The notes under the pieces: generated by a model
Database searches by the model: none
The model's input: only the letters and a program-made list of their open reading frames with translations
What the model was told of the DNA's origin: nothing
Part shown: piece by piece, positions 2,691-62,659 of the stretch
How positions within the stretch are numbered: position 1 is the stretch's first letter
Layout: every line of letters begins with the position of its first letter
Position numbers and translations under genes: made by a program
Origin: Schmidtea polychroa
Taxonomy: Eukaryota
Direction of reading: 5' to 3'
Assembly (NCBI GenBank): GCA_044892525.1
Contig: CM097887.1
Coordinates: forward strand, 49,166,001-49,230,000
Length of the DNA: 64,000 nt

Positions 2691-4025
<1,335 letters not shown>

Positions 4026-11660: not shown

Positions 11661-11668
11661 ATGTTCTG

Positions 11669-35427: not shown

Positions 35428-35575
35428 CAGAATTGAGTACCGCCTTATTTTATTAATTTAATTTATTTTTCTTGTTTTTGAGTTATTTTTTCCTATTTTC
35501 TTTATTTTTATTGTGTTTTTTATTTATTTTCTCTAATTTCTTTATTATCTACTACATTTTACGTTATTTTCTGTC

Positions 35576-35758
35576 ATTCTATTGTCCTATTTTAATTGTT
35601 CTTATTTTTATATTTTTTGTTTTAATTCTTATTTTCTAATTTATTATTTTCCTTATATCCTATTCTATTTTATTCTTAAATTTGTTTTTGTTTTATTTTT
35701 ATTTTAATTTAATTATATTTCACCTAATTTCTTGGATACCCTTCGATTCAGCCCAACA
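35576..35758 (-). repeat. Start of the 3' LTR (183-bp block shared with 56434-56616)
   Basis: Identical by eye to 56434-56616. The A-rich composition continues leftward, so the LTR is probably longer. Confidence 0.85.
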
Positions 35759-35998
35759 AATCACTCGGGGACCCATCAAAATTGCGTCCCGCAATTACAT
35801 ACTTACTTCATTCATTCATAAAAAGAAATAAAATAAACACGACATCATATACAATAAATTTATTAATAAGATAAAGGTCAAAATAGAACCAAGCAGGTAT
35901 CACTTATGGTGATAGGATATATACACAGAAGTTCACGCTAGATAATGTTTTACAGTTCACACTAGATAATGTTTTAAATCAGTACTGGCATTGTTTTA

Positions 35999-36625
35999 TT
36001 ACTCTGAGGACTTTGACTGGGGTTGTTGGTACGTTTTAGGCTCGATGTTGTAGTAGGCCGGACGACTGGTTGATGGTTTGGGAGATTCTTGGTTGGTTAA
36101 TCTGAGTGGACTTGTGTTTTGAGTAATGTTGGGGATTTCGACCGAATTTTGCTGGGTGGCTTTGGATTTCGGTTGTTGGCATTTTTTCTTGAATTCGAGG
36201 ATTTCCAGGAAGGTTATTAGACATAATAGGCTTGTTTCGGCGATCACCACATATAGAAGGTAGTGGGTGTCGCTTTGTCCTGAGGACTTCTCGATCTTTT
36301 CAGGTTCGGAATTTTCCTGTCGTATTTGCACTTCTAGTTGATCCAGGTGATGGATTTGTTCTATCATCACTTTATTTATTTTTCTACACAGGAGGTTTCC
36401 TTGGCACATTATTCGGATATTGTCGATGTAGGTTCGGGTTGAACGGATGTTGTCTATGATTTTGCTCTTCACCAAGGTATGGCATATCGGTTTAGGTGAT
36501 TCGGATTGGGTTTTCGAGTTCTTTCTTCGGTGATCTCGGAGGCTATCTATTTGGGGATTACTCTGTGGCTCGCTCATTAGATTGTTGGCCAATATTATCA
36601 AGGTGATTGTCACTCCCCACCGCAT
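35999..36625 (-). CDS. Accessory ORF-E: small type I membrane protein (~208 aa)
   Basis: Signal-like MRWGVTITLIILA, single hydrophobic segment YLLYVVIAETSLLCLITFLEIL, and a Ser/Thr/Pro/Gln-rich tail. Confidence 0.65.
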   Translation of the reverse strand: MRWGVTITLIILANNLMSEPQSNPQIDSLRDHRRKNSKTQSESPKPICHTLVKSKIIDNIRSTRTYIDNIRIMCQGNLLCRKINKVMIEQIHHLDQLEVQIRQENSEPEKIEKSSGQSDTHYLLYVVIAETSLLCLITFLEILEFKKKCQQPKSKATQQNSVEIPNITQNTSPLRLTNQESPKPSTSRPAYYNIEPKTYQQPQSKSSE

Positions 36626-36680
36626 TATACTGTTATACATCAAACATTTAATTTATTTACAATTGTCGACGGTTTTTTGT

Positions 36681-37361
36681 TTAATCGTCTTTCTTTTGGG
36701 GATTGTTTTCGGTGATTCTCATTAGGGTGGTCTCTGCCTTAATGACCCTATATCTCAACTCTGGTAGCATTGCTAACTGTCGGTCCTTTTCTCGGGCCTC
36801 TCTCTTTAAATGTCTAATTTCTTTTTCCAATCGTCTAATCTCTTCCCTTTTCTTTTCCAGGTTTCTTTTTAGCTCAATTTGTAGGAAGTAATTTTGTTGT
36901 TGATGTTTTCCTTCTATCTCTCTATATTTGCGGATCCACTTCTTCATTCCTTCACTTTCTTGTTGACTTTCTTGCAATTGTTTCTCCAGTTCCTCTATGG
37001 TTGCTTGCCGTTCTCGCGCCTCAGTCTTCCAATAATCGTTAATCACTTCGTTTGCCTTTCTACTGGCCCTTTCTTGCCATAATTCTTCCTCAATCTTCTC
37101 CCAATTTCTCCCTCGTTTTCGTTGTTCTTGCAGCCATTCGTTTTCCTCTTCTGTTTCTCTTTTTACTTCCCCTAGCACTCTACATTCTTTCTTTAGTATC
37201 TTTATTATTTTTCGATCTTCTATGTATTTGTTTACCAGTCTCTCGTTTTCACACTTCTCTGCTCGCAACTCTGCTTCTAGCGTTTGTGTTTCAGTTGTTT
37301 CTGTTACAATTTCTCCTTCTTCCACGTCACTCGTGATTTCTATCATTTCTTCGATTTTCAT
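36681..37361 (-). CDS. Accessory ORF-D: coiled-coil protein (~226 aa; frame open from 37415)
   Basis: Intact frame, E/K/R-rich heptads throughout. Confidence 0.65.
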   Translation of the reverse strand: MKIEEMIEITSDVEEGEIVTETTETQTLEAELRAEKCENERLVNKYIEDRKIIKILKKECRVLGEVKRETEEENEWLQEQRKRGRNWEKIEEELWQERASRKANEVINDYWKTEARERQATIEELEKQLQESQQESEGMKKWIRKYREIEGKHQQQNYFLQIELKRNLEKKREEIRRLEKEIRHLKREAREKDRQLAMLPELRYRVIKAETTLMRITENNPQKKDD

Positions 37362-37543
37362 ATCTATAATATGTACAGTTAATGGTGCGCTATAGTGCGA
37401 CTTATACATATACATTTATATAAAATTTAATAGTTTGGGTTACAATCCCTTGAATACTTTTACAATACTTTAATTTTTTTTTGTTTGGGATATACGTCCC
37501 GTTTTTTTTTTTTTTTTTTTTGTTTTTATCTTTTTGTTCGCCG

Positions 37544-38599
37544 TTATACGAAGGTCTCCTCCTGTCCCACATACCCTTCATCACTATCGACCGCTGGATG
37601 CAACTGTATCGCAATAGGGTCATAAGGTAGGTAGTATTGGGGAATTTGAGCTCTCAATTCATTAACTTCGTCTCTTAGGGCTCGAGTGATGTTCAGCTCT
37701 TCGTCGAGCAGGTAGGTGAGATACCTTGTCTCTTCGTCTTTCATCTCTATTTGTCTATCTAGAGCCTTGATTTTCTCGTCGCCCTTCCATTTTTCAATTT
37801 CTATTTCCAAGTTTTTGATATTTTCGGCATACATTTTCCTCTCGTTTTCTAATTTTTTGTTTTTTCCAGCTAGGACCATATTTCTTTGTTCTAGTGATCC
37901 CTGTAATCCATTGAGGTCTCGTTTCATCTCTGCGACCTGATTTACTAATTCCACAACCCGTCCTGCTTGTTGGGTTATCATCTCCTCCATTGCGGCATTC
38001 TCGTGCTCTCTTATGTCGCATTTTATTGCCAAATGTCGCTCGAACTCCATGGCCTTCATCTGCCATGTTTAGCTTCGGGCGGCGACCTTTCTCAACCGTT
38101 TCAGTTCTTCCTTTATTATTAAATTTTCCTCCCATTTACCCTGTTCGTTTTCATATCCGAGTCTCATGGGCAATTCTTTCATCTCTTTTTTCATTTCATT
38201 ATTTTGTCTTTTCCATTTTCTGGCCTCTGCTTATAAATGCATCAATTTCCTTCCTTCTATTTGCTTTTCCGCTTCGCGTTTTGCGTTTTCGTCAGTGAGC
38301 CTCTTTCTCGCTTCCTGCACTAGCTGCTTTAAGTAGTGGCTGTGCGCTTCTTGGCGGGTATTTTCTAATGATGCCCATTTTGATGCCCTTTTACAAGCTT
38401 CTGCTTCCTCTCTTAAATTGTGGATTAGCCATTGATATTTACTGTTCTCATCTTCTCTGGCTTCTTCGATGTAGTTTCGGGTGAGGTTAGTTAGTTGGAA
38501 CATTACTTTGTTCCATTTTTCGTTGTATTCTCGGGGAATTTGTGTTTTGTGGGTATTGGTTGGGGCTATCGTAGTTTCGGTTATTCTCTCTTGTGTCAT
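37544..38599 (-). pseudogene. Accessory ORF-C: ~351-aa coiled-coil protein with two in-frame TAA (38231-38233, 38069-38071)
   Basis: Track ORFs 38231..38599 and 37544..38059 are in the same frame. The segment between them reads AEARKWKRQNNEMKKEMKELPMRLGYENEQGKWEENLIIKEELKRLRKVAARS. Confidence 0.7.
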
Positions 38600-38797
38600 T
38601 TCTAAATCATTGATATAGATTAATCTTTTTATTATGGAGAAAAAAATTTTTTATTCATTAGTTACTGGTTCTTCGGAAATTTTCGCATCATTTTTGGGTT
38701 TTCGTATTTAGGGTTTTTCATACTATTATTATATAATATTTTATTGGTTATATACGCCGATATATACAGGTTATTATATACAACATTATTCGATGGA

Positions 38798-40186
38798 TTA
38801 CTCCGTTCTACCCTTCCCTTCCCTTCTCACTGTCATTTTTATATATATTGTGTCGTTTTTTGTCATCTCTTCCATCTTCTGCTGTAAGATGAACGTGGGT
38901 GCTCCTGATGCTGCTCCTTCCTCATCAGTAGGTCGTCGGTAACACAGCTGGGTTCCCGTTGTTTTGAAGCTTTGTTCGTGGATGCTTTGGTCATTCATCA
39001 TTGTGATATCGATTTTTGCCTGGAATGGCCATTCTATTACCTCGTCATATTCCCCTTTACATAATAGGAAAAATATTGAAAAATGTGTATTCAATCCGGC
39101 TCCATCTCCGTTGGGATATATCCTCATTTTCATCTTGTACCCATTTTTCCAAGAATGGAATGCAGGACTTGTTATTCTTGTCTCTTCCCCAGTTTTGGCT
39201 TTCCGTATTCTTTCTTTCACTCCCGTTATCTTCCATATATAAGGTGCTGTTGGGGTTATCTCATTTAGATTTATTTCCTGTATTTTCCGATGTAGCTCCT
39301 TGGCCTGATTATTACTGATTTCTATACGATTTATTTGCATCTTTATGTTAGCTCGGGCTTCTTCGAACGCTTCTCTTTCTTATAGTAGTTCTTTGACTAA
39401 CGCTTTCAACGATGTTATTTCTATCTCCATTTGTTTTACTTTCTCTTCACTTTCTTGTAACGCAGTCGACCACATTTCTGCGTGGGTTGAAGCATTTTCT
39501 ACTAAATGATGTGGTAATTCTCCTCGGTGTAGTAGTTTCTGACAGCCCCATTTTCCGAGTACACATGTCATTCTTTTCCTTTCGCATTCCTTTAGGTGTT
39601 GGGCTATTTTTATTGTTCTCCCTTCCTCGCATCAGTTCGGGCATTCCCCACTGAACTCCGCGCATACCTTTTCCTCTTGGACATTGTGATGTTTGCTGGT
39701 GAGATTTTTCCACGTATCTATTTCTCCACAATGTTTGCATCTTTCTAGTCTCTCTTCACACTGGCTTTGATGCTCTTTTTCTTCGCTTGCTCGAATGGTT
39801 TTATGGCACCTTTCACACTGGCTGATTCTGTACATACATTCCCCCATATGTTGCACTACTTTCCATATTACTCCCTTCCATTCGCATGGGGTATTTTTAC
39901 ATCCCAGATTGGTGTTTACCATGTCTTTCACTGCGGCTTTATCCTCGTTAGTGTCTTCTAAACTCGATATTAGTGTCTCTTTACACACCGGGCACCACTG
40001 TGGTCTATTCTTTATTGCTTCACTGATACATTCCTTACATAATCTGCATCCACATTGGGTTTGGTGAGGTTCCTTTAACAACTTTTCACATATTCCGCAC
40101 ATAACATGTTTGTGTATTCTGATCGTTGTAGATTTTCGGACTTGTTCGACAATCTCTCTGAACTCTTCTCTTTGTCGTTTATCCAT
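38798..40186 (-). pseudogene. Accessory ORF-B: intronless full-length TRAF (RING, TRAF zinc fingers, coiled coil, MATH), 462 codons, two in-frame stops
   Basis: RING CGICEKLLKEPHQTQCGCRLCKECI...CPVC; zinc fingers CKNTPCEWKG...HMGEC and CPN*C...HLKEC; MATH YIWKI...SPAFHS...GYKMKMRIYPNGDGAG...HFSIFF...GEYDEVIEWPF. The track ORFs starting at 40186, 39571 and 39340 share one frame, broken by TGA 39632-39634 and TAA 39380-39382. Confidence 0.92.
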
Positions 40187-40271
40187 TCTATAATTATATA
40201 TACATATAGTTCTTATCGATACAGGTTCGATATTTTATTTACAATTATTTACATTTTAAGCTAGGTTTGGT

Positions 40272-40631
40272 TTATGGTTCGGAAGAGTCGGCTTCGTGTC
40301 CGCCCTCCTCTCTATTCATTAGCCATTCTGACCAGTCTTCTATTTCTGTCTGTTCTGCTTCCTCCATCATTCTGTCCAATTCGATTTCCTGTCTTCGGCT
40401 ATATTGGGTTATCCTCTCTATTTCTCTTTGCATTTGTTCGATTTTTAACCTCTGGTCTTCAATTATCTTCAAATAACTAAATCCTCTGTTCATACTCTCG
40501 ATTAGGTTCTTTTGCATCGTCAATCCTTGTTCTTGCAAATTAGACACTAATTGTGCTAATACGGCACATTGTTGCTTCCATAATTCTTCGGTTACTGTGT
40601 TGTGGTTCATTTCGTTATTTCCTTGCTCCAT
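40272..40631 (-). CDS. Accessory ORF-A: small acidic coiled-coil protein (~119 aa)
   Basis: Intact frame with heptads LKIEQMQREIERI...IELDRMMEE. Confidence 0.55.
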   Translation of the reverse strand: MEQGNNEMNHNTVTEELWKQQCAVLAQLVSNLQEQGLTMQKNLIESMNRGFSYLKIIEDQRLKIEQMQREIERITQYSRRQEIELDRMMEEAEQTEIEDWSEWLMNREEGGHEADSSEP

Positions 40632-40791
40632 TCTTAATTTATATACACTTTTCAACTCTTATCTAAATTTAATTTTATTTTATGATTCCCGTTATTGTAT
40701 AATATTGATACCGCGCTTATATAACGATATAGTACTGTTATATACATAAGATATACTTACTTTTTACAATTATATACAGTCATATTCCTTT

Positions 40792-43700
40792 CTATATACG
40801 GGGTTTTGGAGGGCGCTGGGCGTTCCAGGCCTCCACCCACTGTTCTTGTTTGACATCACTTGGTCGTTTCACTCGATGTTGGAAATTTCTGATTCGGGTC
40901 ATCTCTAGTTCTCCGCGATGTCGTTTATCTTTAATTATTTTTATTGTTCCCCCCGTTATGATTAGGAATGCCCCTGTTATTATTATCCCACTGATCCACA
41001 TCATCTGCTTTACGCTTATACTCTCTGGTTTTTCCTTGTTTATTAATGTTGATATCGCTTCTGTACTTTTCTCGTTTCCTCTTTTGCCATTTCCTTTCAT
41101 CATCTCTCGTATTCTTGCTATTTCCTCGTTCATACCCTCCTTTGCCATCTTTTGTATTTTTTCCATCTCTTCCTCCGAAACATAGTTGTCCTGAGCTTCC
41201 TCGCCGGTTTTCTTGTGCTTTCCTCCTTCGTCTTTTTCGTCGTTGTTTTTTCTTTTCTTCCCTCTTTTCCCCGGGTATCGTCGACATTCCCTTTTTGATT
41301 CGTTCCTCCAGATACAAACTGTGTATTCCTTTGGGGGCTGCTGCTGCGTCACATATTGATGGCATCTCTCACCTGGTCCTAATCTTGAAATACAGACTTT
41401 GTGTTCTTTTCTTGGTTGAAGTGGCGTTATTACTACTTCACCTCCTTTTCCTAGGTGCACCTCTTTTCCCTTCACGTTCGTTATTCTTTTCCCGTCTCGA
41501 TTTCGGTATGCTTCTTGTATTCTTACCTCTGTTATTGGTTCTGTGTCCTCATTTATCAGTACTAATCTCTGATACGCTCTAGACATACATCTTCCTAGTA
41601 TGCACCTTTCCTTTAGGCCCCATTCTTCCTTTAAGTCCCACTGCTGTTCTTGTGCTTGCTTTTTCTTTTCTTGTTTTAGTTCTTCCTCTTTGCTATCTTG
41701 ATTCTCCGCTTCTTTGGTTTCTTTTATCGTTCTCGTCCCTCCATGAGCTGTTACTAACTCTATCAAGGTTAGCATGATTATCATTAAGATCATATTTGTT
41801 TCCATTTCTTTGTTAGTGAAAGGTAGGCATACCCTCTGTTTTCCATTATTCGGTTTTTCCTCCTCTTTGGTCTTGGTTCCCGGGCTGTTTCCCTCTCTTC
41901 TTGTACCCGAATCCTTGTTTTCCGGTTTATCCTCTTCCGGTTCTCTTTTCCCTTTATCCTCCTTTCGGCCTTTTCCGTCATTGTCATCGTGTTTATCTCC
42001 CCCGCTGTTGTTTAAAATGTCGTCCTCGACATTTATATCGTTCAGTAATCTGCGATATGCTGTTAACACTCTGTTCCTTGCTAACTTTGCTTCGAATTCA
42101 AACTCTTTTCTACCCGTTGCAGCATGTCTCTTTCTATTCCATTCTTTGACTAATTCTCTCAATTGAATACGACGATGTTTTCCAATTCGTTGTTGCTCGT
42201 TTTGATTTTGCGTGAATTTGAGGTCTTCTCTATTTAATACTATTAAGATAATTTTAGGCGTCCCCCCTTTAGTTAGGGTATTCTTTACCATCGCGTTTTC
42301 TCCGTTTTCGTAAAATTCGTTTATATTTATCGCATATTTATTATTTTGTGGTACTCTCCATGTCAATAATAATTTCATTGCTTCTAGATTTTTCCGTACC
42401 GTATTCCACTGAAATTGTGATGTGTTTTTGCATATATTTTCAACTTCCTCTTTTGTCGCATTTTTGCAAATAAATCTGATCATTTCCAAGTTTGGCTGTA
42501 TGGTTGCCCAGTCCAATGTGGAGTTCCCTTCGTTTGATTTTTCGTCTAGTCTCGATCCTGATTGATGTAGGATGTGGAGTGTTTTTGGGTGTATTTTCGT
42601 TATAGCTGCATACATCATGGCGGTTTCGCCTTGTTCATTTTTCGTGTTGGTTTCCTCGCCCATATCTCTAAGGATTCTCATGATCGTTATTGCTCTATTT
42701 TCTTTCGCTGCTAGTATTGCTTGTTGTAGTGGTGTTCTGGAATCCTTCGTTACCATCGTAAATGCTCGGGGCAAGAAGGTTTTAATTTTACCGATGTCCA
42801 AATTCGTTGTTTGATCTCTTGCATATGTATGCACGGTTTTTATTATTTCTGATAATATTATTTCATCTGGTAGCTCTAGCATTTCCTCAAAGAACACTTC
42901 TTTCGCTTTGCATATTATTGCTCTTTGATCTATATTCATTGATTTTGTTTCGATGAAGTTATTTGCGATTTTATGGTTCGTTTGCGCCATTGGTTCTCTT
43001 GATGTCTCATGCCTTATTTTCATTTTCTTTCCGGTTGGATTATTGATTCGTTCCTCTGCGGTAAGTATTTGAATAATATCTAGATAATTCTCGCGGATGT
43101 TGTTCATCGTGTCCATCATGTATAATACACTTACCGTTTCCCAATGTTTATTTCGTACCTGAGTGATGAATTGGAATATTGATTTTTCGAATGTGTCAAT
43201 TCGCTTTTTTAATAACTGCTCATCCTTATGATTTGTGAATGTTATTCCTCGTTCTAGTAATTGATTCGGGATTTCGAATAAATGATGTCCTCTCATAGCT
43301 TCTCTCATCAGTGTGTTTTCTCCTCTCGTGAATGCTTCGTTTACGTTGATCATATAATTATTTTTAATTGGGTTTCTCCAAGTGATTAATACTCCGGTAA
43401 TTGTTGTCAGTTTCTCTTTGATCGCTGTTAATAATCCCTCATACATGTTTCCGACTTCTCGATTGTCCTCGTATGATAGTAGCTCCATCAACGACGTAAA
43501 CGCTTCGGTACTTTTCCCTTCGATAGCATGATGTAGTGCGTTTTTCCGATCGTGGTCTTGTGTAGTTATTTTTGATCCTGTATCAAGTAATGCGGTTATT
43601 ATGTCTTTTGTTTTGCCTCTGTTTGCTGCTATCATTAATGGTGTGTAACCTTGGTTATTTTCTTGTTCTGTTGATCGCTTGCAGTCGTGAAATGCTTCTA

Positions 43701-44960
43701 TTGTTTCTAGTATTTGCTCATTGTTACCTACTTTCATGAGTTTGTGTAATGGTGTGTCTCCATAATGATCTGTTATTGTAAATAATATTGGCCATTGACT
43801 TTTAACTACTCGTAATAACGGATGTGTTCTCTCTCTGTTTGCATAGTTTTCGATCATCGTCAATAATCCTCCTAATATTTCGAAATCTAATCGATCTTTT
43901 GCCCATCCGGGTAATTTTATCTTTACCTCTCGTACGATTTTTTCAGCTTCCGATGGTTGTATGCCCAATCGTCCAGTGGTAGGTTCTGCGAGTTGTTGCA
44001 TCATGTTCATTCTGTAGGTTTGCGAACGTGTGGTTAATGTACGGCCTTCTGGTTGACTGGTGGCTGTTTTTGGAATTGATTTGCATCGTGCCACGTTTAC
44101 GTATATTGGCCTGGTGAATGGATTATTTACCAATTTCACTCTTACATTGGTTTCGCCTACGAACAAGATCTCATATGGCCCTTTTCCGTTCCATTGTAAC
44201 TTTCTTGTGGTTCCGGGAATTAATTCTGGGGTCTCGATCATCACCCAATCGCCTGTTCGAAACGTATGTTGCTTCACGTTTTTCTTTCGATCGTGTAAAT
44301 CTTTATAACTTTCCTGGTAGAACTTGATATTTAATCCCGCAGTTTCCCAAATCTCCTGCATTCTTTCTTTGAATTTCGTAACATAATCATCTATCTCCAT
44401 GTATTGCGATATCGGTGGTTGGTATTCCAGGTCCATTGGCATGTTGCATTCTCTTCCGTACATTAATTTAAATGGGCTCATTTTTGTTGATGCGTGAATC
44501 GACATTCCGTAAGCCATAAGACATAGATTTATGTATTCATCCCAATCTCGTTGGTGGCGATCGACGTAGTTTGATAACATTTGTATGAGTGTTCCATTAA
44601 ATCTTTCCGTCATCCCATTGGTTTGAGGGTGATATGGGGATGTTCTTAGTTTTGCGATTTTGAAATAGTTTGTTACTTCGCTCATTATCTCACTCATGAA
44701 ATTAGTTCCTTGATCAGTTAGTATTTGTTTCGGTGTTCCATAACGGCAACATATCTCTTCTACCAGTATCTTTGCAATTGTTTTGGCTTTTTGGTCTGGC
44801 ATCGCGAATGCTTCTGGGAATTTCGTGAGAAAGTCGGTAATCACTAAAATATAAACATTTCCTTTATCCGATTCTGGTAATGGACCAACTACATCCATTG
44901 ATATCATCGTCATCGGCTCTATTGGTACTGGCATTGGCGTTTCGATCCAGTGTTTTTCCT
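40792..44960 (-). CDS. Polyprotein C-terminal part: integrase core + GPY, two ankyrin clusters, internal signal peptide, small ectodomain, transmembrane anchor
   Basis: ISMDVVGPLP / ILTDQG / GMTERFNG (D-D35-E) and GKGPY. ANK motifs GDTPLH, GYTPLMIAA, RKNALHHA, SRTPLQ and GETAMMYAA. Hydrophobic MILMIIMLTLIELVTA (~41750-41800) and MWISGIIITGAFLIITGG (~40950-41005). Confidence 0.9.
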
Positions 44961-50024: not shown

Positions 50025-50042
50025 TTCTACGTGATTTGCGAA

Positions 50043-53000
50043 CTATTTATTGGGTATTTTCCTTGCAGCTAATCCCATCAAATTATACATCAAATAAGTC
50101 ATTACCACTAGATGATGTTCGTCGTCATTTGCATTTGTCGTGAGCTGTTCAATCACTCTCTTGGTTTCATCCCAATCCGTTTTGGTAGTTTTCGTTTTTT
50201 CTTTGATTAGCTTTGGGATTATCCCCGATACGATGTGCCATAATTGTCTAGCTTCTACACTGGCTACTTTCCGTTGCCACAAGCGTCTAAGTTGTGGGTT
50301 TGTTATTATCAACATATCTTTTATCAATTCTCGTATCCATTTTTCTCCTCTTTCAATCGTTGGTTGGGCTTCCTTTAGTTCTCATACTATTTTGTCTAAC
50401 TTTTCCAATCGAACTTGCCCTTGTCCTTGTTTTACTTGTTCCTTGGTTTTGAACTCAGATTTCTCTCCTTGTTTCTTAGGTCTTCCTTTTGCCCGTTTTT
50501 CCATCATCGTTCCAGCTTCTCTGGTATTTTCGTAGTTCGGATTTCTTTCGTTATCCGTTCTGGGTAATGAGCTATCGTTATTTCTCAGCCACTCATTCCA
50601 TTCATCTATTATTTTATCAGTTTGACCTTCCGATGTTATTTTTGTTGGTTCTCTTTGCTTCTGGAATTGTTCATCCGTTTCGGTTTCCGTAGTATTGTCG
50701 ACGATTTCCTTGATGTTCAGTTTCGTTGGTTGTTGATAACTTGTTGATGGTTGGTTGTTGGTCCATATTTCGGCTCCGGTTGGCCATCTCACTAATAGCG
50801 GTGATCTTTCTCCTGGTTCCTCGTCACTATCTTCGAGGATAATCTCTTCGACTTCTTCAGTTTCATTAGATTTACTTGGTGCTTTGTTCGGACTCGGAGT
50901 ACTCAAACTACCTTTTGTTGGTTTATTGATTTTGCTTTTCCTTTTCAACGGTTTTCCCAACATTTCCGCCATTGTTAACACATTAGTCTCTTCTAGTCTC
51001 ATGGGTGTTATTCCGACGTCTGCATTATCGTCTAGTGATTTTCCTTGCAGTTGTAGATGGAATGGAGTTTCGTATGCTAATTTCTTTTTTAATTCCCTGA
51101 TTTTGGTGGTTGGGTGTACTTCTACTTCTTCAACATTCTTATCTGGGTATTTAATTCGGATTCGATATCTTTCTTGGGTATCTTGTGACCACTCGTGGTT
51201 TCGCCACTTCCCGATAATTTGTTCCAGTTGTTCAGGGTACCATTCGTTGTATTGCCGGTATTCTTCTATAGTTTTTACTATCTCTCTCAGACAATGGATA
51301 TTATCCGATATTTTTAAAATGAAGTTAGCCAATGCTATTACCTGTCGTTTTTGATTTTTCGCTCCCTTTATCAGGATGTCGCCTAATTGTTTATATCTTT
51401 CTCTCTCTTCTCGTTCTCTTGCTTCCGTCGCTTCCTCGCCGTCTATATCGGCATATTCTCGTTCCTTTTTCCGCATTGCATGAATATGTCTCGCCTCATT
51501 TTCGCTTTCTGACGTGACGTCCGTCTCGCTTTCGTCATCTGATGTCTGTCCCCTTGCTTCCTCTTCATATTCTGGAGGTTCCTCTTCTTCTTTCTCCGAT
51601 TCACTTTCTGTCTCACCAATGTCTGTTTCTACGAAGATTCCTTTCCGGATTTCCCATTCCTTATTTTCTATATTCCACACTCTTTCCCATGGGGTTCGTC
51701 TGCAGGATCTGGTACTTAGTTTCGTGATTTTTCCTTGTAGTTCCTTTTCTTTTAACCATTGTTGGTGAATTTCAATTATTTCTGTAGATTTTTGATATAA
51801 CGTTTTCATCCGGTCTCGTATTTCTTTTTGATATGTTACGTCTCTTGTTCGAAATTCATCCATTGGTACTATCCTGATTATTTGGTGATCGTCCCACATA
51901 CCCATTTCACTCAACGAGGTGTCGTCCTCCGCTCGTAATATTATTTTATCGTACATCATGACTACATCATTTACCATACCATCACTACTTTCGCTACGTA
52001 CCTTTTCCGTTATCTCTTGGTTTATCTTTGATACCAAATCATCCACTGTACTCTGATTGCTCATTTTTATTCGTCGTTTCTCTTCGTTCGGTAACCATAT
52101 GGTTATTTCCAACCTCTGCGGCTGGGTTTCTTTTAACCTTCCATATTTGTGAATCAAATTTATGGTTCTCCAATCACTCATTCGGAGCAATTCTGTATCT
52201 CGTAACCGGCTCATTAGTTCGTACATGGCTGGGGCTCGTCTGGTGATGAGTAAATCCCAGTTGTCTTCCACTTGTTCTTGAATTTGTTTGATCAGCTTGT
52301 CCAGGTTTCGTCTCAGAGTACATTTTTTTATTTGTTCTAATTTCAATTTGATATTAAAATCATATTCCGCCTTGGCATCTTTAGCCCAATCGTACAGGTT
52401 AGCTGGTTGTTTTTCTTTGTGCAACTTCAGTATTTGCGTTTCTCCTGGCCATATTAGTGCATCCACTAAGTGCATATCTTGTTTGACTTGCTCTCCTTGA
52501 TATTGGTATAGGTACTCCTTTTTCCTCGAGCTACCTAAGTGTTCCCGTATCCAATCGAAAAGTTCGTCGGTGACTGTGTTTTTAATCCATATTCTCTCAA
52601 GTCCTTTACTCGTTCCGATTTTTATTACATATCGAGTGGTATCGACCTGCTTCATTTTTTCCATATATTTTTTTATAATTGATTTTTCCTCGTTTGGTAT
52701 TAAATCTTTCTCGTTTCTTTCCAATTTCATCACTTTTTGCACGAATCGTCTGAATGGTATTATATCGATGAACTCTTGGTTCCTCACTACTACTGGGAGT
52801 ATTTCAGCTACTTGTCTTATCGCTTCCTCCCTCGCTTTTCTCAACTTTATTTCGATATCCTCGTCTTCACTTTCGCTGGTTATCTCGCTTTCGTCTTCTT
52901 CCTCTTCGATTTCCCCTTTTGGAGGTTCGCTTATTTCATTTAGCTGTAGTATTTCTCCACCCAAACTGCTCACATAGTCTTCGTCTGAGGACGACGTACC

Positions 53001-53888
53001 TTTTGTCCTTTTCATCATGTTGATTCGCAAATTTCTCATCCTAGGTACTCTCTTTAGTTTTCTATTTTCGAATATCGTTGTTTCTTCTGATTCCGATTCT
53101 TGTAGCATTTGGGGGTTTAACTGACTGATTTGCTCCTTGTTTTGGTTGTTTCCCTCTTTTATTCTTATTTCCGTTTCTTCATGTTTCTTTTCTATTTTAT
53201 CTTTTATCTTTTTCCAGAATATTTTCTGAATTCTCTGGTTCCCTTTCAAGATCGTGGTTGAATTCTCTGTTTTCATTTTCGTTGTCGTTTCTTTTAACTT
53301 TTCTGGTTCAGTCATGGGTACTACCCCTGGGTTTTTCCCGTAATTGTAGCAGTACTGGCTTTTCATGTCTTTTACTAATTTCATCATATTTATTCGCAAT
53401 GGTTGTTCTTGTCGTTGTTGGTTGCGTTCTTGTTTTATCCTCTCTTCCTCGGCCTGTAGTCTTTGCCATTCTTGTACATGTTGATGTACTTCATAACTGT
53501 TGAGATTTTCGGTACTCCTCATCATACGTATATTCTGGGTTTGTTGTGGTGCTGGTTCTTGTCTTGGTCTCATCATTTGTTGCATCATCTGTTTCATTTG
53601 GGAAATTTCCTGCATAACGTTCATTTGTTTTCCTTCACTAGGGTTACTTTGTCGTTGCGGATTCGACATGTAATTAGTATTTCGTTGTGGTGGTCGTTGT
53701 GGTTGACCCCTTTCTCGGCAATCTCTGGAGATGTGACCTGGCTGACAACAGTTAAAACAACCTCTCAACTGGCATCTATTTTCCGTATGTCCGCGCCGTC
53801 CGCAACGATTACAATTTGCGTTTCTATAACAATCTCTGTCCCAGTGTCCTGGTCTACCACATGTTCGGCACTGCTTGTTATCGTTCAT
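50043..53888 (-). CDS. Gag C-terminal part: three CCHC knuckles, Q-rich and acidic linkers, three ubiquitin-like domains; in-frame TGA at 50382-50384
   Basis: CRTCGRPGHWDRDC, CNRCGRRGHTENRC and CFNCCQPGHISRDC. The track ORFs starting at 53888, 50327 and 50024 are all in the same frame. Confidence 0.85.
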
Positions 53889-54940
53889 ATTTCGTTATTG
53901 AAATTGTTCTCATTATTCAGGTTGTTACGATTACCATTATTCCCATTTGATCGTCCTTGTGGTGGTTTGAAGATTTGATGCGCTCCTGGTATAAATTGAT
54001 TCATTTTCGGTTCCTGATTGTTGTTATCTCCGTTATCCGCTTTCGCTATTGCTGTCGCTATCCTCCCATCCTCTTGCATAATATTCATTTGAGCTGGAAG
54101 GTGGAGCTCGCATCTTGTAGCCCAGTCTATGGCTTCCTCTAACGTTTTGCACATTTGACAACCTACTGAGGCTCTTACCTCCTCTCGGCGTAATCCCTCT
54201 ATGAAATAGCCGATCAGATTTTCCTCGGGTAATTTCCCATTCATTGCTTTCTTCGCTAATCTTCGTAATTCACTGGCATATAATGTTATCGATTCGTTCG
54301 CTCTTTGTTTCCTATTTGCTAGTTCGCCCAACGCCTGGTTGATTGGCTTACTGGCTCCGAAGGTTTTCTTCAAGAATGTTTTGATATCTTCCCACTTCTC
54401 TAATTTCGTATCTCTCTCTTTAGCTTCTAAATATACTTCTAATGCGCTATCGCACAAAAACAACGGCATCCTTTTGCTAATTGCTTCGGGTGTCCATCCA
54501 CACACAGTGATATAAACTTCAAAATTAGTTATAAACGTTGCTAACTTGTTTGCATTTCCATTGAACGGTTCTCCTCTGAACTTCTCTTTATACTCGTCGG
54601 TTTTTACGACATTCGTCATGATTGGTGTTCTAGATTCGTCTGTTTCTTTTAAATTGTCTAACGATGTGACTAAACTCTGGGCTGATAATTCTTCGGTTGA
54701 CGTTGCTAAACTATTAGTGATGTCGGACAAACTTTCTCTGCTTCGAGATCGACTAGGGGTGTATCCGAGATTTTCTTGGTCAAATATGGGTACTTGATTG
54801 GTTCTTCTTGCTCCTTGTGATATTCCTCTTTGATGTTTAATAGATCGTCCTCTTTTGAGTTGTTGTAGTTCGTCTCCTGAAAATAATACGTCTCCTGGCT
54901 TACTTGAAGATCTAAGATTTGGTTTATCCGTGATTCTTTC
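53885..54940 (-). CDS. gag: Gag capsid domain (no ATG start in this copy)
   Basis: FNGN...FITNFE...W...LFLCDSALEVY...WEDIKTFLKKTF...RKQRANESITLYASELRRLAKKA...FIEGLR...TLEEAI is a retrotransposon capsid pattern. The frame is open from 54940. Confidence 0.85.
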   Translation of the reverse strand, partial: ERITDKPNLRSSSKPGDVLFSGDELQQLKRGRSIKHQRGISQGARRTNQVPIFDQENLGYTPSRSRSRESLSDITNSLATSTEELSAQSLVTSLDNLKETDESRTPIMTNVVKTDEYKEKFRGEPFNGNANKLATFITNFEVYITVCGWTPEAISKRMPLFLCDSALEVYLEAKERDTKLEKWEDIKTFLKKTFGASKPINQALGELANRKQRANESITLYASELRRLAKKAMNGKLPEENLIGYFIEGLRREEVRASVGCQMCKTLEEAIDWATRCELHLPAQMNIMQEDGRIATAIAKADNGDNNNQEPKMNQFIPGAHQIFKPPQGRSNGNNGNRNNLNNENNFNNEI

Positions 54941-55982
54941 CTACGCTTCCTTGTAATTAGCGGCTACCGACTTGGGTGGATTGGTTTCTGGTGAAGTTTC
55001 CTTCGTAAATTATTCGGTATGAGTCTGCTACTGCGATTCTGAGGAGATTTACTAGTCCTTGACAGATGGCTGCTAATACTATGAGGCTGAATATATCGGT
55101 GATTTGTTCGAAGTTGGAGATGTCGCTCTCTGTATCTTCTTCCGTTCTGGAGTCTTCCGGTTGCTGGGTTTCTTGGTGCGGGTTCTGAATGGATTTATTC
55201 TTGGTCGATTGTTGATTTCTTCGAATTTCTTTTGTGCAGGTTCTGGGTTGGCTTGATTGGCTGGCTTGATTTGATATCTAAAATGAAAAAATGATCTCGT
55301 GTTTCATCTGCTTACACGACTTCATCATTCTTTCTGCAACATTCAAACACAGACACCTTTTAGGTTTCTGTTTGTGTTTCCCCCATCTTTTGTGAAATCC
55401 TTTCCGCGGGTTATAATTTCCCATCAGCCCGTATTTTTCGTCGATTTTAAATTATCTATATGCGGTAGTAACAATTATCTATAGAGTCGTAATAATTATC
55501 TATTCGCTATCAATTATAATATAAATAGGTCGTTGTCGGTCTCTACTTATTACCCCCCTTCGTTTTCCTAATCCCTTTGCGCCATGTCGCTATTTTACTT
55601 TTCGTATTTACTATTATTCCACTCGGTTCTACTCTGGAACCAATAAAATATATTTTCCCGCTTCACCCAAAAAAATTATTCCGTAGAGTTTCTCTATTTC
55701 ACTGGGATCCCTTTAATTAGTTAGTTACTTTCCTCTTCTACTCGTTATCATCATTTCACCTATTCTTTATTTTCCATTATCTTTTAATTCATTTCCTTCT
55801 TCCCCTTCCTTTTCCATTATAATCTTATTATCTTTTCCACGAGCTCGTTTATTTCCTCTCTAAACTCAAATTTTCGTAATTACATTCAATTTGTTTCTAG
55901 CTAGCTTTAGTATTCCATTTCACTATTAATCTAAATATTATCTCATTGTAGCTTAACTGCTATCTATCGCTTTTCTAGGCCT

Positions 55983-56278
55983 TTACGACTGGCTGGCACT
56001 ATTCAACAGCTCAATCTTCTTCCTTCTGATCGGTTGGACTATTCGACAACTCGATCTTACGACTGGCTGGCACTATTCAACAGCTCAATCTTCCTCCTTC
56101 TGATCGGTTGGACTATTCAACAACTCGATCTTACGACTGGCTGGCACTATTCAACAGCTCAATCTTCCTCCTTCTGATCGGTTGGACTATTCAACAACTC
56201 GATCTTACGACTGGCTGGCACTATTCAACAGCTCAATCTTCCTCCTTCTGATCGGTTGGACTATTCAACAACTCGATC
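55983..56278. repeat. Four near-identical 74-bp tandem repeats in the 5' leader of the giant element
   Basis: Units start at 55983, 56057, 56131 and 56205. Each is a dimer of ~37-bp half units (ggcactattcaacagctcaatctt / ggactattcaacaactcgatctt). Confidence 0.95.
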
Positions 56279-56433
56279 TTAATATTCCCCACTCTGCATG
56301 CTGCTACTTCTCTTTTCCTCTTTTACCCCGAATTATCATTTTCTCTGTCTCTACTTTTAATTTGTCGACTTGATCTTTACCGCTTGAGAGTGTTTCCCCT
56401 TTCCCCCCTTGCTCAAAACGCACGACGATCGCG

Positions 56434-56616
56434 ATTCTATTGTCCTATTTTAATTGTTCTTATTTTTATATTTTTTGTTTTAATTCTTATTTTCTAATTT
56501 ATTATTTTCCTTATATCCTATTCTATTTTATTCTTAAATTTGTTTTTGTTTTATTTTTATTTTAATTTAATTATATTTCACCTAATTTCTTGGATACCCT
56601 TCGATTCAGCCCAACA
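56434..56616 (-). repeat. Start of the 5' LTR (183-bp block)
   Basis: Identical to 35576-35758. The sequence switches abruptly to unrelated GC-richer DNA at 56433. Confidence 0.85.
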
Positions 56617-57446
56617 ATACTAATATATTTGGGTCAGAATCATGTTTTGCCCAACAATAGCTAAGCTGCAAATTAACATTATCATACCAATTGTTATTAT
56701 AAATATATAAATTATGTCAGTACATTGCATGATTTTTCGCGGGTTAAGTCTAATTATCATATATTTAATAAATATATTATGCTCTCCCCCATTTCTGTAC
56801 TCGAGTTCTAGATTGCTGTGGACTCAATTCCTATTCATATCTCATTTTATAAATATTAAATCATAACAAACTCTTTCATTTTAATTTGGTTTTAAGAAAT
56901 AATGACATTTAATGTCCATCGCAACAATTTGATCATTGTGGGGTAATGACTGTCACGCTATTTCAGTTTGAATGGCTACCATGATGTTGCCGAGTTGCTA
57001 GCCTTATATTCATGAAAGGGATGAAATCTGGATATGGAGCGAAAATTTTAGAAAAATTGTTGTTAGATTATCAGATTCAAATTTGTTATTTTGAGACTGT
57101 TTCCCATCGTTTCAGCCACCTTTAACCACCTTGTTAATTAGATAAGTTGATGTGTTTGATTAATTGTGAATTTAATAATATAAATTTTGTTTTATAATTT
57201 TAGAACAAAAAAACACCGATATCTTTACTGATTCATAGTCACAAATTTCTAATAAATACAATGTCAATTGAAAATAAGCCACAGGTGAAAATTGAAAAAA
57301 GTTCTTATAATATATATAGTGCAAATCCCAATAGTAGGTTTACGGATGTACTTGTAAACAGTTTCTGTGTATGATGGTGTCTCCAGGGGCGAATATGATT
57401 TTTCATACGCCATGTTTACAAGTTTACAAATTTTCTGTGACCAAGC

Positions 57447-62130: not shown

Positions 62131-62530
62131 TTATTATTNNNNNNNNNNNNNNNNNNNNNNNNNNNNNNNNNNNNNNNNNNNNNNNNNNNNNNNNNNNNNN
62201 NNNNNNNNNNNNNNNNNNNNNNNNNNNNNNNNNNNNNNNNNNNNNNNNNNNNNNNNNNNNNNNNNNNNTCATTATCATTATGATTATTATTATTATTATT
62301 ATCATTATTACCATTAATATTATCACTAATATTATTATTATTATTACTATTATTATTATTATTATCATTATTATCATCATTACTACCATTAATATTACTA
62401 TTAATATTGCTATTATTATTATTATTATTATTATTAATCTTATTATTATTATTATTACCATTATTATTATTATTATCATTATTACTATTATTATTATTAT
62501 TGTCGTTATTATCATCGCTAATACTATCAT
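62131..62530. repeat. (ATT)n microsatellite with a 130-N gap (62139-62268)
   Basis: Visible trinucleotide repeat; source of the poly-Asn and poly-Ile pseudo-ORFs. Confidence 0.97.
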
Positions 62531-62659
62531 TGTCCCTATTCATAAGTTGTAGTTCACAAAAATAAAAATCTAAATCAAATATTGATTTAGGATTTCCCCC
62601 CGGAGTTAAATTTGGAATCAACCTTTTTGAACTAATAGGAATGACTGAAATACTAGAAA

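What the first reader, a model, noticed from the sequence alone, without database searches (positions are those of the whole stretch)
35576..56616. Giant complex-retrovirus-like gypsy element: gag-Ubl / env-pol-ankyrin-membrane protein / five accessory genes including TRAF
Seen: ~21 kb between identical LTR-start blocks, all ORFs co-oriented, with gypsy PR-RT-RH-IN plus at least four kinds of captured modules (viral-type glycoprotein, ubiquitin-like folds, ankyrins, TRAF). Established: typical Ty3/gypsy elements are ~5-10 kb with gag, pol and at most a 3' env. Giant gypsy elements (Burro) are described from the planarian Schmidtea mediterranea, so this could be a relative. Inference: this is an endogenous enveloped retrovirus-like lineage with accessory genes. 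I know no description of this particular architecture.
Basis: partly seen in the sequence, partly recalled or inferred. Interest (0 to 1): 0.95.

Follow-up and report, generated by a model that had tools for sequence, protein, structure and literature searches.

The report
Giant Burro-like enveloped gypsy retroelement
This is a real 21-kb virus-like retrotransposon in a flatworm genome that carries a viral envelope gene and captured host-type genes, but it belongs to the already published "Burro" kind of giant planarian elements, and this copy is broken.

Summary
Confirmed: a 21,042-nt unit (35576-56617, minus strand) lies between two identical 184-nt repeats. It holds gag, two zinc knuckles and a ~1,100-aa poorly conserved region with a weak ubiquitin-like signal. 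A complete viral fusion glycoprotein (Pfam PF24664, E 4.5e-70) follows, in the same uninterrupted frame as PR-RT-RNase H. Then come integrase, two ankyrin modules and six small co-oriented genes, one a full RING/zinc-finger/MATH TRAF. Pol is Ty3/gypsy (Ty3 Gag-Pol, E 2e-103). Flanking host genes are flatworm-like.

The architecture is not new. Burro/GYPSM1 giant gypsy elements of planarians were published with these same oddities: env in frame between gag and pol, Ubl, TRAF-MATH, ankyrin, accessory ORFs. Gag-env-pol gypsy elements are also catalogued in Platyhelminthes. Relatives found here carry gag-knuckles-central region, or env-PR-RT-RH-IN, in single proteins. Two carry TRAF parts inside the polyprotein, so these parts belong together.

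This copy is defective: 2 frameshifts and 2 in-frame stops in the polyprotein, and 2 in-frame stops in TRAF.

Still open: only 184 nt of terminal repeat, no target-site duplication, no recognisable PBS/PPT, and five orphan small ORFs.

Verdict: real, a new member (possibly an already catalogued family) of a known kind; moderate interest.

The parts
56434..56617 (-). 5' terminal repeat block (184 nt, starts with TG in element orientation)
   Evidence: 100% identical to 35576-35759. The two copies share nothing beyond these 184 nt.
55983..56281 (-). 74-nt tandem array, 4 copies, in the 1.7-kb leader between the 5' block and gag
   Evidence: Tandem Repeats Finder: period 74, 4.0 copies, 99% matches. 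Tandem repeats are drawn in published Burro maps.
40792..54730 (-). gag-env-pol-ankyrin polyprotein gene. It is broken in this copy (2 frameshifts, 2 in-frame stops) and is listed as one part.
   Evidence: ORFs and Pfam domains. Relatives carry the corresponding parts in single proteins.
54185..54469 (-). gag capsid domain (Retrotrans_gag / Ty3_capsid)
   Evidence: Pfam 1e-11. It is 52-53% identical to the gag part of relatives P0124 and P0273.
53769..53873 (-). two CCHC zinc knuckles (nucleocapsid)
   Evidence: Pfam zf-CCHC 4.7e-08, two stretches. PDB matches to retroviral Gag/nucleocapsid proteins.
50934..51164 (-). ubiquitin-like region (weak signal)
   Evidence: Sub-threshold Pfam hits, all starting at the same residue: Rad60-SLD 0.039, ubiquitin 0.073, OTU1_UBXL 0.034. 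The single-sequence model has beta-beta-alpha-beta-beta order but pLDDT 53. Nearly all of the listed Foldseek matches are ubiquitin/SUMO/ISG15/NEDD8, but none reaches E 0.001. The region aligns weakly with the same region of P0001.
48009..49838 (-). env: viral fusion glycoprotein with an internal signal-like hydrophobic segment, ectodomain and transmembrane anchor
   Evidence: PF24664 at 4.5e-70 covers profile positions 3-579 of 653. The hydrophobic start and the TM anchor are seen. Twelve of 16 cysteines are invariant in five relatives, and a furin-like site lies in the variable loop. Identity to P0001, P0002, P0275 and P0276 is 32-39%.
47166..47441 (-). retropepsin (PR), DTG motif present
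   Evidence: Pfam RVP 1.9e-10; motif check.
46026..46502 (-). reverse transcriptase, YIDD motif present
   Evidence: Pfam RVT_1 6e-36. Best solved structures are Ty3 Gag-Pol 7q5b (2.1e-103) and Ty3 RT 4ol8 (6.8e-93). Motif check.
45450..45839 (-). RNase H
   Evidence: Pfam RT_RNaseH 1.7e-38 and RT_RNaseH_2 6.1e-37.
44080..45128 (-). integrase (zinc-binding, catalytic core with D,D,E, C-terminal part)
   Evidence: Pfam Integrase_H2C2 5.9e-21 and rve 4.8e-13. 48% identical to the integrase of P0002. Motif check.
43216..43878 (-). ankyrin-repeat module 1 (fused after integrase)
   Evidence: Pfam Ank_2 1.1e-17. PDB ankyrin-repeat proteins down to 3e-15. It is an internal duplicate of module 2 (E 8e-13).
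42193..42858 (-). ankyrin-repeat module 2
   Evidence: Pfam Ank_4/Ank_2; PDB; internal duplication.
40795..42192 (-). highly charged tail of the polyprotein with two moderately hydrophobic segments
   Evidence: Composition and hydropathy. No Pfam or PDB family.
40272..40655 (-). accessory ORF 1 (127 aa), orphan
   Evidence: ORF. No Pfam match. Codon log-odds are positive only in its own frame.
38798..40186 (-). TRAF-like gene (RING, TRAF zinc fingers, coiled part, MATH/TRAF-C). It is broken in this copy (2 in-frame stops) and is listed as one part.
   Evidence: Pfam RING and TRAF MATH 1.4e-27. PDB TRAF6/TRAF5 RING-zinc-finger 1e-14 and TRAF3/1/2 TRAF-C 1.4e-28. The middle piece has a weak zf-TRAF signal. 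All pieces lie in one frame, with stop counts.
38231..38599 (-). accessory ORF (122 aa), orphan
37544..38059 (-). accessory ORF (171 aa), coiled-coil-like, orphan
36681..37415 (-). accessory ORF (244 aa), orphan
35999..36643 (-). accessory ORF (214 aa) with one hydrophobic segment, orphan
35576..35759 (-). 3' terminal repeat block (184 nt)
   Evidence: Identical to the 5' block. It is followed by an A-rich tract that the 5' copy lacks.
29639..30067 (+). neighbour: host Spc25-like exon
   Evidence: Pfam Spindle_Spc25 3.6e-06.
57836..58399 (+). neighbour: zf-BED ORF
   Evidence: Pfam zf-BED 4.6e-08.

Best explanation
This is one inserted copy of a Burro-like giant Ty3/gypsy (Metaviridae-type) retroelement in a flatworm genome, most likely a planarian.

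Shown:
- The gene order, in element orientation, is: terminal repeat, 1.7-kb leader with a 74-nt tandem array, gag capsid, two zinc knuckles, a long poorly conserved region with a probable ubiquitin-like domain, a complete viral fusion glycoprotein, PR, RT, RNase H, integrase, two ankyrin modules and a charged tail.
- Six small genes follow, one of them a full RING/zinc-finger/MATH TRAF homologue, and then the second terminal repeat.

Inferred mechanism for an intact family member:
- A genome-length RNA is transcribed from the 5' repeat and translated into a giant polyprotein.
- The hydrophobic segment in front of the glycoprotein acts as an internal signal and puts the ectodomain into the ER lumen. 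The downstream transmembrane helix brings the chain back, so PR-RT-IN stay cytosolic.
- Host signal peptidase, a furin-type protease and the element's own PR cut the chain.
- Gag and nucleocapsid package the RNA. RT/RNase H and integrase make and insert the DNA copy. The glycoprotein would allow passage between cells.
- The ubiquitin-like, TRAF and ankyrin parts are host-derived modules that most plausibly tamper with host ubiquitin, TRAF/NF-kB-type and cell-death signalling.
- The small 3' genes would need subgenomic or spliced RNAs.

Shown for this copy: it cannot do this on its own. The polyprotein gene has 2 frameshifts and 2 in-frame stops, and the TRAF gene has 2 in-frame stops.
For: Pol is Ty3/gypsy:
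- Ty3 Gag-Pol (7q5b) matches at 2.1e-103 and 350 bits. Retroviral RTs reach at most 116 bits.
- The order is PR-RT-RH-IN, with the DTG, YIDD, HHCC and D,D,E motifs present.

Env:
- PF24664 matches at 4.5e-70 over nearly the whole profile.
- It lies in the same uninterrupted frame as PR, RT and RNase H.
- It is flanked by a signal-like segment and a TM helix.

The parts belong together:
- GC and AT skew are uniform over the whole 21 kb and differ from the flanks.
- All genes are co-oriented and tightly packed.
- All small ORFs score as coding only in their own frame.

Independent relatives show the same joins:
- P0001 carries gag-knuckle-Ubl-env-PR in one 2,099-aa protein.
- P0002 carries env-PR-RT-RH-IN in one 2,627-aa protein.
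- P0273 carries gag, knuckles and the central region in one protein.
- P0123 has a TRAF MATH domain inside the central region, and P0133 has TRAF-type zinc fingers there.

Literature:
- The same set of unusual features is published for Burro/GYPSM1 (PMC6431247).
- Gag-env-pol gypsy elements are catalogued in Platyhelminthes (PMC13524379).
- BURRO1 is transcribed and under PIWI control in planarians (PMC8532177).

Host: the PSMC4 exon in the window is most similar (92-93%) to platyhelminth proteins. The flanks are about 70% A+T, as reported for Schmidtea.
Against: - Only 184 nt of terminal repeat are shared, whereas published Burro elements exceed 30 kb in total with an internal region of up to 25 kb, which implies kb-sized LTRs.
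- I found no target-site duplication, no TGG-type primer-binding site after the 5' block and no purine tract before the 3' block.
- BCL2-like, BIR, dUTPase, Smc and AIR1 motifs reported for Burro were not found here by Pfam.
- Protein identity to the relatives I could reach is only 30-66%.
- The catalogued Burro sequences could not be compared.
- Five of the six accessory ORFs have no relative anywhere I could look. Their membership rests on composition, orientation and packing only.
- The host species is not identified.
Confidence: 0.85

Rival explanations
1. The copy is intact and uses recoding. On this reading the frame changes and in-frame stops are programmed events (ribosomal frameshifting and stop read-through, as in retroviral gag-pol expression), not damage.
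For: - The first frame change is in the -1 direction, the usual retroviral direction (my frame arithmetic from the ORF coordinates).
- The stops inside the polyprotein are one TGA and one TAG, kinds that can be read through.
- The terminal blocks are identical, so the insertion is young.
- The two frameshifts could also be homopolymer errors of a long-read assembly.
Against: - Relative P0273 reads through capsid, knuckles, the central region and the next piece without any interruption. P0001 and P0002 do the same for their parts.
- I saw no slippery-heptamer-like run at the first junction.
- A programmed shift inside integrase is not known for any retroelement family (my knowledge).
- The TRAF gene, which has no reason to be recoded, also has two in-frame stops, TGA and TAA.
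Confidence: 0.08
2. It is a composite or chimera. On this reading the 3' block of small genes (TRAF and the five orphans), and perhaps the ankyrin tail, are not part of the element. They would be host DNA, a nested insertion or a mis-join that happens to lie before a stray partial repeat.
For: - The two terminal blocks agree for 184 nt only and then share nothing.
- There is no target-site duplication.
- The five orphan ORFs have no relatives among the proteins held and no Pfam or PDB family.
- P0002 has no ankyrin repeats after its integrase.
Against: - Composition and strand skew are uniform through the 3' block and change only at the repeats.
- There is no second pair of repeats and no other transposon signature inside.
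- The TRAF gene is intron-less and co-oriented.
- TRAF parts are physically inside the polyprotein of two relatives.
- Ankyrin repeats and accessory ORFs are published features of Burro.
- The ankyrin modules are in the same open frame as the integrase core.
Confidence: 0.07

Closest known systems
Burro / GYPSM1 giant gypsy-like LTR retroelements of dugesiid planarians (Jurka 2007; Grohme et al. 2018; Arkhipova and Yushenova 2019, PMC6431247)
   Same: - Giant size.
- Gag with CCHC knuckles at the start of a huge polyprotein.
- A ubiquitin/SUMO-like domain upstream of env.
- An env-like fusion glycoprotein in frame between gag and PR, related to mononegavirus-type glycoproteins.
- PR-RT-RH-IN followed by ankyrin repeats.
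- A TRAF MATH module.
- Tandem repeats in the non-coding part.
- Accessory ORFs that can alternatively be polyprotein subdomains.
   Different: - Here TRAF is a complete stand-alone gene (RING, zinc fingers, MATH) downstream of the polyprotein. In Burro1 it is inside the polyprotein, and in the D. tigrina element it is in an upstream ORF.
- This copy has two knuckles.
- No BCL2-like, BIR, dUTPase, Smc or AIR1 motif was detected.
- Five further orphan ORFs lie at the 3' end.
- The terminal repeats are only 184 nt and the unit is 21 kb rather than more than 30 kb.
- Sequence identity to the catalogued Burro families could not be measured.
Gag-env-pol Ty3/gypsy 'errantiviruses' with HSV gB-type (class III) ENV in Platyhelminthes, Nematoda and Bryozoa (PMC13524379)
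   Same: - Gypsy pol with env placed between gag and pol.
- Ectodomain flanked by a signal peptide or TM helix and a TM helix.
- Many conserved cysteines.
- A furin-type site that is not always present.
- Flatworm hosts.
   Different: - That survey searched for three-ORF elements of ordinary size.
- Here env is fused in frame to pol, the element is about 21 kb, and it carries host-type modules.
- I could not confirm the class III fold for this env: the model failed (pLDDT 37.7) and there is no sequence match in the PDB.
Mosquito BEL/Pao elements that captured a Chuviridae-like glycoprotein (Dezordi et al. 2020, as cited in PMC13524379)
   Same: An LTR retroelement that acquired a glycoprotein of the negative-strand RNA virus (Monjiviricetes) type.
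   Different: - It belongs to a different retroelement superfamily.
- Env is a separate ORF, the size is ordinary, and there are no host-type accessory modules.
Complex retroviruses, including the large foamy-like fish endogenous retroviruses with accessory ORFs (as reviewed in PMC6431247)
   Same: - A cluster of small accessory genes at the 3' end before the terminal repeat.
- Gag with zinc knuckles, PR, RT, IN and an envelope gene.
   Different: - RT and IN are Ty3/gypsy, not retroviral (350 versus at most 116 bits).
- Env lies upstream of pol and in its frame.
- The size is larger.
- The resemblance is in layout, not descent.

Membership tests
Ty3/gypsy (Metaviridae-type) LTR retroelement | pol order PR-RT-RNase H-IN, with RT closest to Ty3/gypsy | tested here: met
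   Ty3 Gag-Pol 7q5b matches at 2.1e-103 and Ty3 RT 4ol8 at 6.8e-93. A caulimovirus enzyme matches at 2.4e-61 and retroviral RTs at about 1e-32.
Ty3/gypsy (Metaviridae-type) LTR retroelement | gag with capsid domain and CCHC nucleocapsid knuckles | tested here: met
   Retrotrans_gag 1e-11, Ty3_capsid 4.7e-06 and two zf-CCHC hits.
Ty3/gypsy (Metaviridae-type) LTR retroelement | full long terminal repeats (TG...CA) flanked by a target-site duplication | tested here: inconclusive
   The identical 184-nt direct repeats start with TG. There is no CA end, no target duplication, and no similarity beyond 184 nt.
Ty3/gypsy (Metaviridae-type) LTR retroelement | primer-binding site after the 5' LTR and polypurine tract before the 3' LTR | tested here: inconclusive
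   Neither was seen next to the blocks. No tRNA gene in the window was available to test complementarity.
Burro/GYPSM1-like giant gypsy of planarians | internal region of 20 kb or more | tested here: met
   20.7 kb lie between the repeat blocks.
Burro/GYPSM1-like giant gypsy of planarians | env-like fusion glycoprotein in frame between gag and PR | tested here: met
   PF24664 (4.5e-70) lies in the same uninterrupted frame as PR, RT and RNase H. The same join is seen in P0001 and P0002.
Burro/GYPSM1-like giant gypsy of planarians | ubiquitin/SUMO-like domain between gag and env | tested here: inconclusive
   Pfam hits are sub-threshold (0.03-0.08). The model is of low confidence, with beta-grasp strand order. 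Foldseek tops are ubiquitin-like proteins, but with E near 1.
Burro/GYPSM1-like giant gypsy of planarians | ankyrin repeats in the polyprotein after integrase | tested here: met
   Ank_2 1.1e-17, two duplicated modules.
Burro/GYPSM1-like giant gypsy of planarians | MATH_TRAF module in the polyprotein or in an accessory ORF | tested here: met
   It is present as a downstream accessory gene. It sits inside the polyprotein in relatives P0123 and P0133.
Burro/GYPSM1-like giant gypsy of planarians | BCL2-like, BIR, dUTPase, Smc/AIR1 motifs reported for Burro-1 to -4 | tested here: not met
   No such Pfam hit appeared in any piece, even at E up to 1-10. These motifs vary between published family members, so this lowers identity with Burro1, not kinship.
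Burro/GYPSM1-like giant gypsy of planarians | kb-sized LTRs (total length above 30 kb) | tested here: not met
   Only 184 nt are repeated and the unit is 21,042 nt.
Burro/GYPSM1-like giant gypsy of planarians | host is a dugesiid planarian | tested here: inconclusive
   The host PSMC4 exon is most similar to platyhelminth proteins (92-93%). The flanks are about 70% A+T. The species is not identified.
Burro/GYPSM1-like giant gypsy of planarians | sequence identity to a catalogued Burro/GYPSM family (Repbase, Dfam) | not testable with these tools
   Those libraries are not on hand. The unnamed UniParc relatives reached here are 30-66% identical in protein.
Gag-env-pol gypsy elements with gB-type ENV (PMC13524379) | gene order gag, env, pol | tested here: met
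Gag-env-pol gypsy elements with gB-type ENV (PMC13524379) | ectodomain flanked by a signal peptide or TM helix and a TM helix | tested here: met
   A hydrophobic segment lies before the ectodomain and a TM helix after it. Both are conserved in P0001 and P0002.
Gag-env-pol gypsy elements with gB-type ENV (PMC13524379) | class III (gB-like) fold of the ectodomain | tested here: inconclusive
   The AlphaFold model from a 5-sequence alignment has pLDDT 37.7 and is unusable. No solved structure matches by sequence.
Retroviridae (complex retroviruses) | RT/IN of the retroviral lineage and env as a separate gene after pol | tested here: not met
   Ty3 scores 350 bits against at most 116 bits for retroviral RTs. 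Env lies before pol and in its frame.

The most novel reading that the evidence does not exclude
This element represents a separate lineage within the Burro-like group. In it the TRAF module has left the polyprotein and become a complete RING-TRAF gene, inside a 3' cluster with five otherwise unknown genes. That would be a 'complex' metavirus genome, with subgenomic or spliced RNAs for env and the accessory genes, convergent on complex retroviruses and not yet catalogued.
Probability: 0.3. Interest if true: 0.65.

Novelty: new member of a known kind. Interest (0 to 1): 0.42.

Why it matters
Burro-like elements are the largest known LTR retroelements. They are the only ones described with an envelope glycoprotein translated in the same frame as gag and pol, and they are abundant, transcribed and under PIWI control in a leading regeneration model.

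This copy adds one concrete observation. The same host-derived TRAF module sits inside the polyprotein in some family members and is a free-standing complete gene in this one, next to five unknown small genes. That documents how such elements shuffle captured immune and ubiquitin modules, and it gives defined targets for expression and proteomic checks.

For the scan, the finding is real but the kind is already published, so it should not be ranked as a new class.

Tried and rejected
- Searched for the rest of an LTR. blastn of the two ends against each other, and of the 5' leader and the whole element against the window, found only the 184-nt blocks and the internal 74-nt array.
- Looked for a target-site duplication, PBS and PPT by eye at both blocks. 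The tRNA scan found none in the window. The scan for the inverted form of the block's first bases found nothing useful, only a 12-nt copy just outside the 5' block.
- The bacterial promoter/terminator scan of the leader is irrelevant for a eukaryote and I ignored it.
- Rfam over the whole window gave no match.
- The exact look-up of the TRAF-C ORF in public assemblies found nothing on record.
- Word-based protein searches with env found only four unnamed relatives and no named virus protein.
- An exhaustive search with the 1,168-aa central piece found only two proteins matching beyond the zinc knuckles.
- PDB sequence searches with env, alone or as a profile, found nothing for env. The last two accessory ORFs also gave nothing.
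- The AlphaFold model of env from five sequences reached pLDDT 37.7. I did not send it to a fold search, because the matches would be meaningless.
- The idea that the small ORFs are paralogues of each other or of parts of the relatives is rejected: no hits.
- The idea that the neighbouring gypsy copy (8618-12643) is related is rejected: its RT is only 34% identical.

Full report
OBSERVATION. The window holds two 100% identical 184-nt direct repeats at 35576-35759 and 56434-56617, 20,858 nt apart. The bounded unit is 35576-56617, 21,042 nt. Every ORF with a domain match between the repeats is on the minus strand. The unit also stands out by composition. GC is 0.37-0.40 and AT skew -0.26 to -0.45 from 36 to 56 kb, against GC 0.27-0.33 and skew near zero outside.

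ANATOMY, in element (minus-strand) orientation.
- The 5' repeat block is followed by a 1.7-kb leader with four copies of a 74-nt tandem unit.
- Next is a gag capsid domain (Retrotrans_gag 1e-11) and two CCHC knuckles.
- About 1,100 residues follow with almost no relatives. Among 1.84 billion representative proteins, only two matched anything beyond the knuckles.
- Within that region there is a weak ubiquitin-like signal. Four Ubl-type Pfam families align from the same residue at E 0.03-0.08. A low-confidence single-sequence model has beta-grasp strand order. Its Foldseek matches are nearly all ubiquitin, SUMO, ISG15 or NEDD8, but with E near 1.
- A complete viral fusion glycoprotein comes next. 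Pfam PF24664 (Monjiviricetes_fusion) matches at E 4.5e-70 and covers profile positions 3-579 of 653.
- The glycoprotein is preceded by a hydrophobic signal-like segment and followed by a strong transmembrane helix. Twelve of its 16 cysteines are invariant in five relatives, and a furin-like site lies in the variable loop.
- In the same uninterrupted frame come retropepsin, RT and RNase H. Integrase follows.
- The catalytic motifs DTG, YIDD, HHCC and D,D,E are all present.
- The best solved-structure matches of pol are Ty3 Gag-Pol (2.1e-103, 350 bits) and Ty3 RT (6.8e-93). Retroviral RTs reach at most 116 bits. Pol is therefore Ty3/gypsy.
- The integrase frame runs on for about 1,100 residues. 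These hold two ankyrin modules that are duplicates of each other and a highly charged tail with two moderately hydrophobic segments.
- Six small co-oriented genes follow. One is a full TRAF homologue, made of a RING plus TRAF zinc fingers (TRAF6/TRAF5, 1e-14), a weak further TRAF finger and a TRAF-C/MATH domain (TRAF3/1/2, 1.4e-28; Pfam 1.4e-27).
- The other five genes (127, 122, 171, 244 and 214 aa) have no Pfam or PDB family. Each scores as coding only in its own frame under the codon usage of the large ORFs.
- The unit ends with the 3' repeat block.

STATE OF THIS COPY. The gag-env-pol-ankyrin gene is in pieces, with two frameshifts and two in-frame stops (one TGA, one TAG). The TRAF gene has two in-frame stops (TGA, TAA). 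No nested insertion was seen.

I read these as damage, or in part as assembly error for the frameshifts, and not as programmed recoding, for three reasons.
- Relatives read through the corresponding points.
- The open stretches between the stops are far longer than the 4-10% stop density of non-coding frames would allow by chance.
- The first junction shows no slippery run.

ENDS. The two repeat blocks begin with TG and are identical, but they share nothing after 184 nt. I found no target-site duplication, no TGG-type primer-binding site after the 5' block, and no purine tract before the 3' block. There is no tRNA in the window to test against. The A-rich skew of the element continues roughly 150-250 nt past the 3' block. 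Three readings remain possible: short non-canonical LTRs, one rearranged or truncated LTR, or an assembly problem. The window alone cannot settle this.

RELATIVES.
- P0001 (2,099 aa, ENA) has gag, a knuckle, the Ubl-like region, env and PR in one protein. Its env is 33-39% identical to the window's.
- P0002 (2,627 aa, GenBank HBK71150.1) is filed under a Flavobacteriaceae MAG and is clearly mis-binned. It has env-PR-RT-RH-IN in one protein, with 32% identity in env, 40% across PR to the integrase zinc-binding domain, and 48% in the integrase core.
- P0273 (UniParc) has gag, two knuckles and the central region in one protein.
- P0123 has a TRAF MATH domain (3e-28) embedded in the central region. 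P0133 has TRAF zinc fingers at the same place.

So env is part of the polyprotein in independent family members. TRAF parts also belong to the family, but they sit in a different position in the window's element.

HOST AND NEIGHBOURS. The window carries a PSMC4/Rpt3 exon whose most similar proteins (92-93% identity) are from Schistosoma, Hymenolepis and Paragonimus. Other host exons are present (WD40, RTP1-like, Spc25-like). There is also an ordinary gypsy copy with only 34% RT identity and a zf-BED ORF. The flanks are about 70% A+T, as reported for Schmidtea genomes. The host is a flatworm, probably a planarian, but the species is not identified.

LITERATURE.
- Arkhipova and Yushenova 2019 (PMC6431247) summarise Jurka 2007 and Grohme et al. 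2018 and add their own annotation.
  - Burro/GYPSM1 of S. mediterranea has an internal region of up to 25 kb. Its 4,873-aa ORF1 carries gag, three knuckles, MATH_TRAF_C, a Ubi2/SUMO-like domain, a BCL2-like motif, env with hits to mononegavirus fusion glycoproteins, PR, dUTPase, RT, RH, IN, BIR and ankyrin repeats.
  - They call the env the first case of in-frame localisation between gag and pol.
  - A Dugesia tigrina relative has two knuckles and its MATH_TRAF_C in a separate ORF.
  - They note that accessory ORFs may alternatively exist as subdomains of the polyprotein.
- A 2026 survey (PMC13524379) catalogues gag-env-pol gypsy elements with gB-type ENV in Platyhelminthes, Nematoda and Bryozoa.
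- BURRO1 is described as highly abundant and active, and it is de-repressed when SMEDWI-2 is lost (PMC8532177).

MECHANISM. The gene content and order are shown. The rest is inferred.
- An intact member would be transcribed from the 5' repeat and translated into a polytopic polyprotein.
- The internal signal-like segment would put the glycoprotein ectodomain into the ER lumen. The TM helix would return the chain, so gag and PR-RT-IN stay cytosolic.
- Signal peptidase, a furin-type protease and the element's own PR would separate the parts.
- Particles built from gag would carry the RNA, and env would allow cell-to-cell passage.
- The TRAF, Ubl and ankyrin modules most plausibly interfere with host ubiquitin, TRAF-type signalling and cell death, as Arkhipova and Yushenova also suggest.
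- The 3' genes would need subgenomic or spliced RNAs.
- The copy in the window is defective and could at most be carried along by intact relatives.

COMPARISON AND NOVELTY. The element works like, and by most defining features is a member of, the Burro-like group. It differs from published Burro1 in five ways:
- TRAF is a free-standing complete gene at the 3' end.
- Five orphan 3' ORFs are present.
- No BCL2, BIR or dUTPase motif is detectable.
- The unit is 21 kb.
- The terminal repeats are 184 nt.

I could not compare it with the catalogued Burro-1 to -4 sequences, so it may even be one of them. I file it as a new member of a known kind. It is not a retrovirus by descent, and its likeness to complex retroviruses is one of layout only. 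Interest is moderate: the thing is real and unusual among retroelements, but a specialist would recognise it at once.

Noticed in passing
window 8618-12643 (-): An ordinary-sized Ty3/gypsy copy in three ORFs: gag with a CCHC knuckle, PR-RT, and RH-IN. Its RT is only 34% identical to the giant element's, so it is a different family.
   Followed up: partly
window 2970-4025 (+), 5702-6391 (-), 16592-17176 (+), 29639-30067 (+): Host exons: proteasome ATPase PSMC4/Rpt3 (most similar to platyhelminth proteins, 92-93%), a WD40 protein, an RTP1/TANGO6-like protein and an Spc25-like kinetochore protein.
   Followed up: partly
window 57836-58399 (+) and 58626-59594 (+): A zf-BED ORF followed by a 322-aa ORF without any Pfam match. 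This may be a remnant of a hAT-type transposase or a domesticated BED gene.
   Followed up: no
window 56646-56657 (-): A 12-nt copy of the first bases of the terminal repeat block lies 40 nt outside the 5' block. Its meaning is unknown.
   Followed up: no
window 35440-35575 (-): An A-rich tract with 21- and 40-nt tandem units follows the 3' repeat block and has no counterpart after the 5' block. The element's strand skew continues through it.
   Followed up: partly
window 35930-35976: Two copies of a 24-nt direct repeat lie between the last accessory ORF and the 3' repeat block.
   Followed up: no
window 61481-61827 and 62252-62574: An AT-rich array of roughly 22-nt units, and a 9/12-nt periodic array that abuts an N run.
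   Followed up: no
protein P0002 (GenBank HBK71150.1): This protein is filed under a Flavobacteriaceae metagenome-assembled genome, but it is an env-PR-RT-RH-IN polyprotein of this retroelement family. The 9-kb contig is eukaryotic DNA mis-binned into a bacterial MAG.
   Followed up: partly
polyprotein central region versus P0123 and P0133: The stand-alone TRAF MATH domain is about as similar to the MATH embedded in relative P0123 (36%, 112 bits) as to human TRAF3 (103.5 bits). A single capture followed by relocation cannot be told from independent captures.
   Followed up: partly
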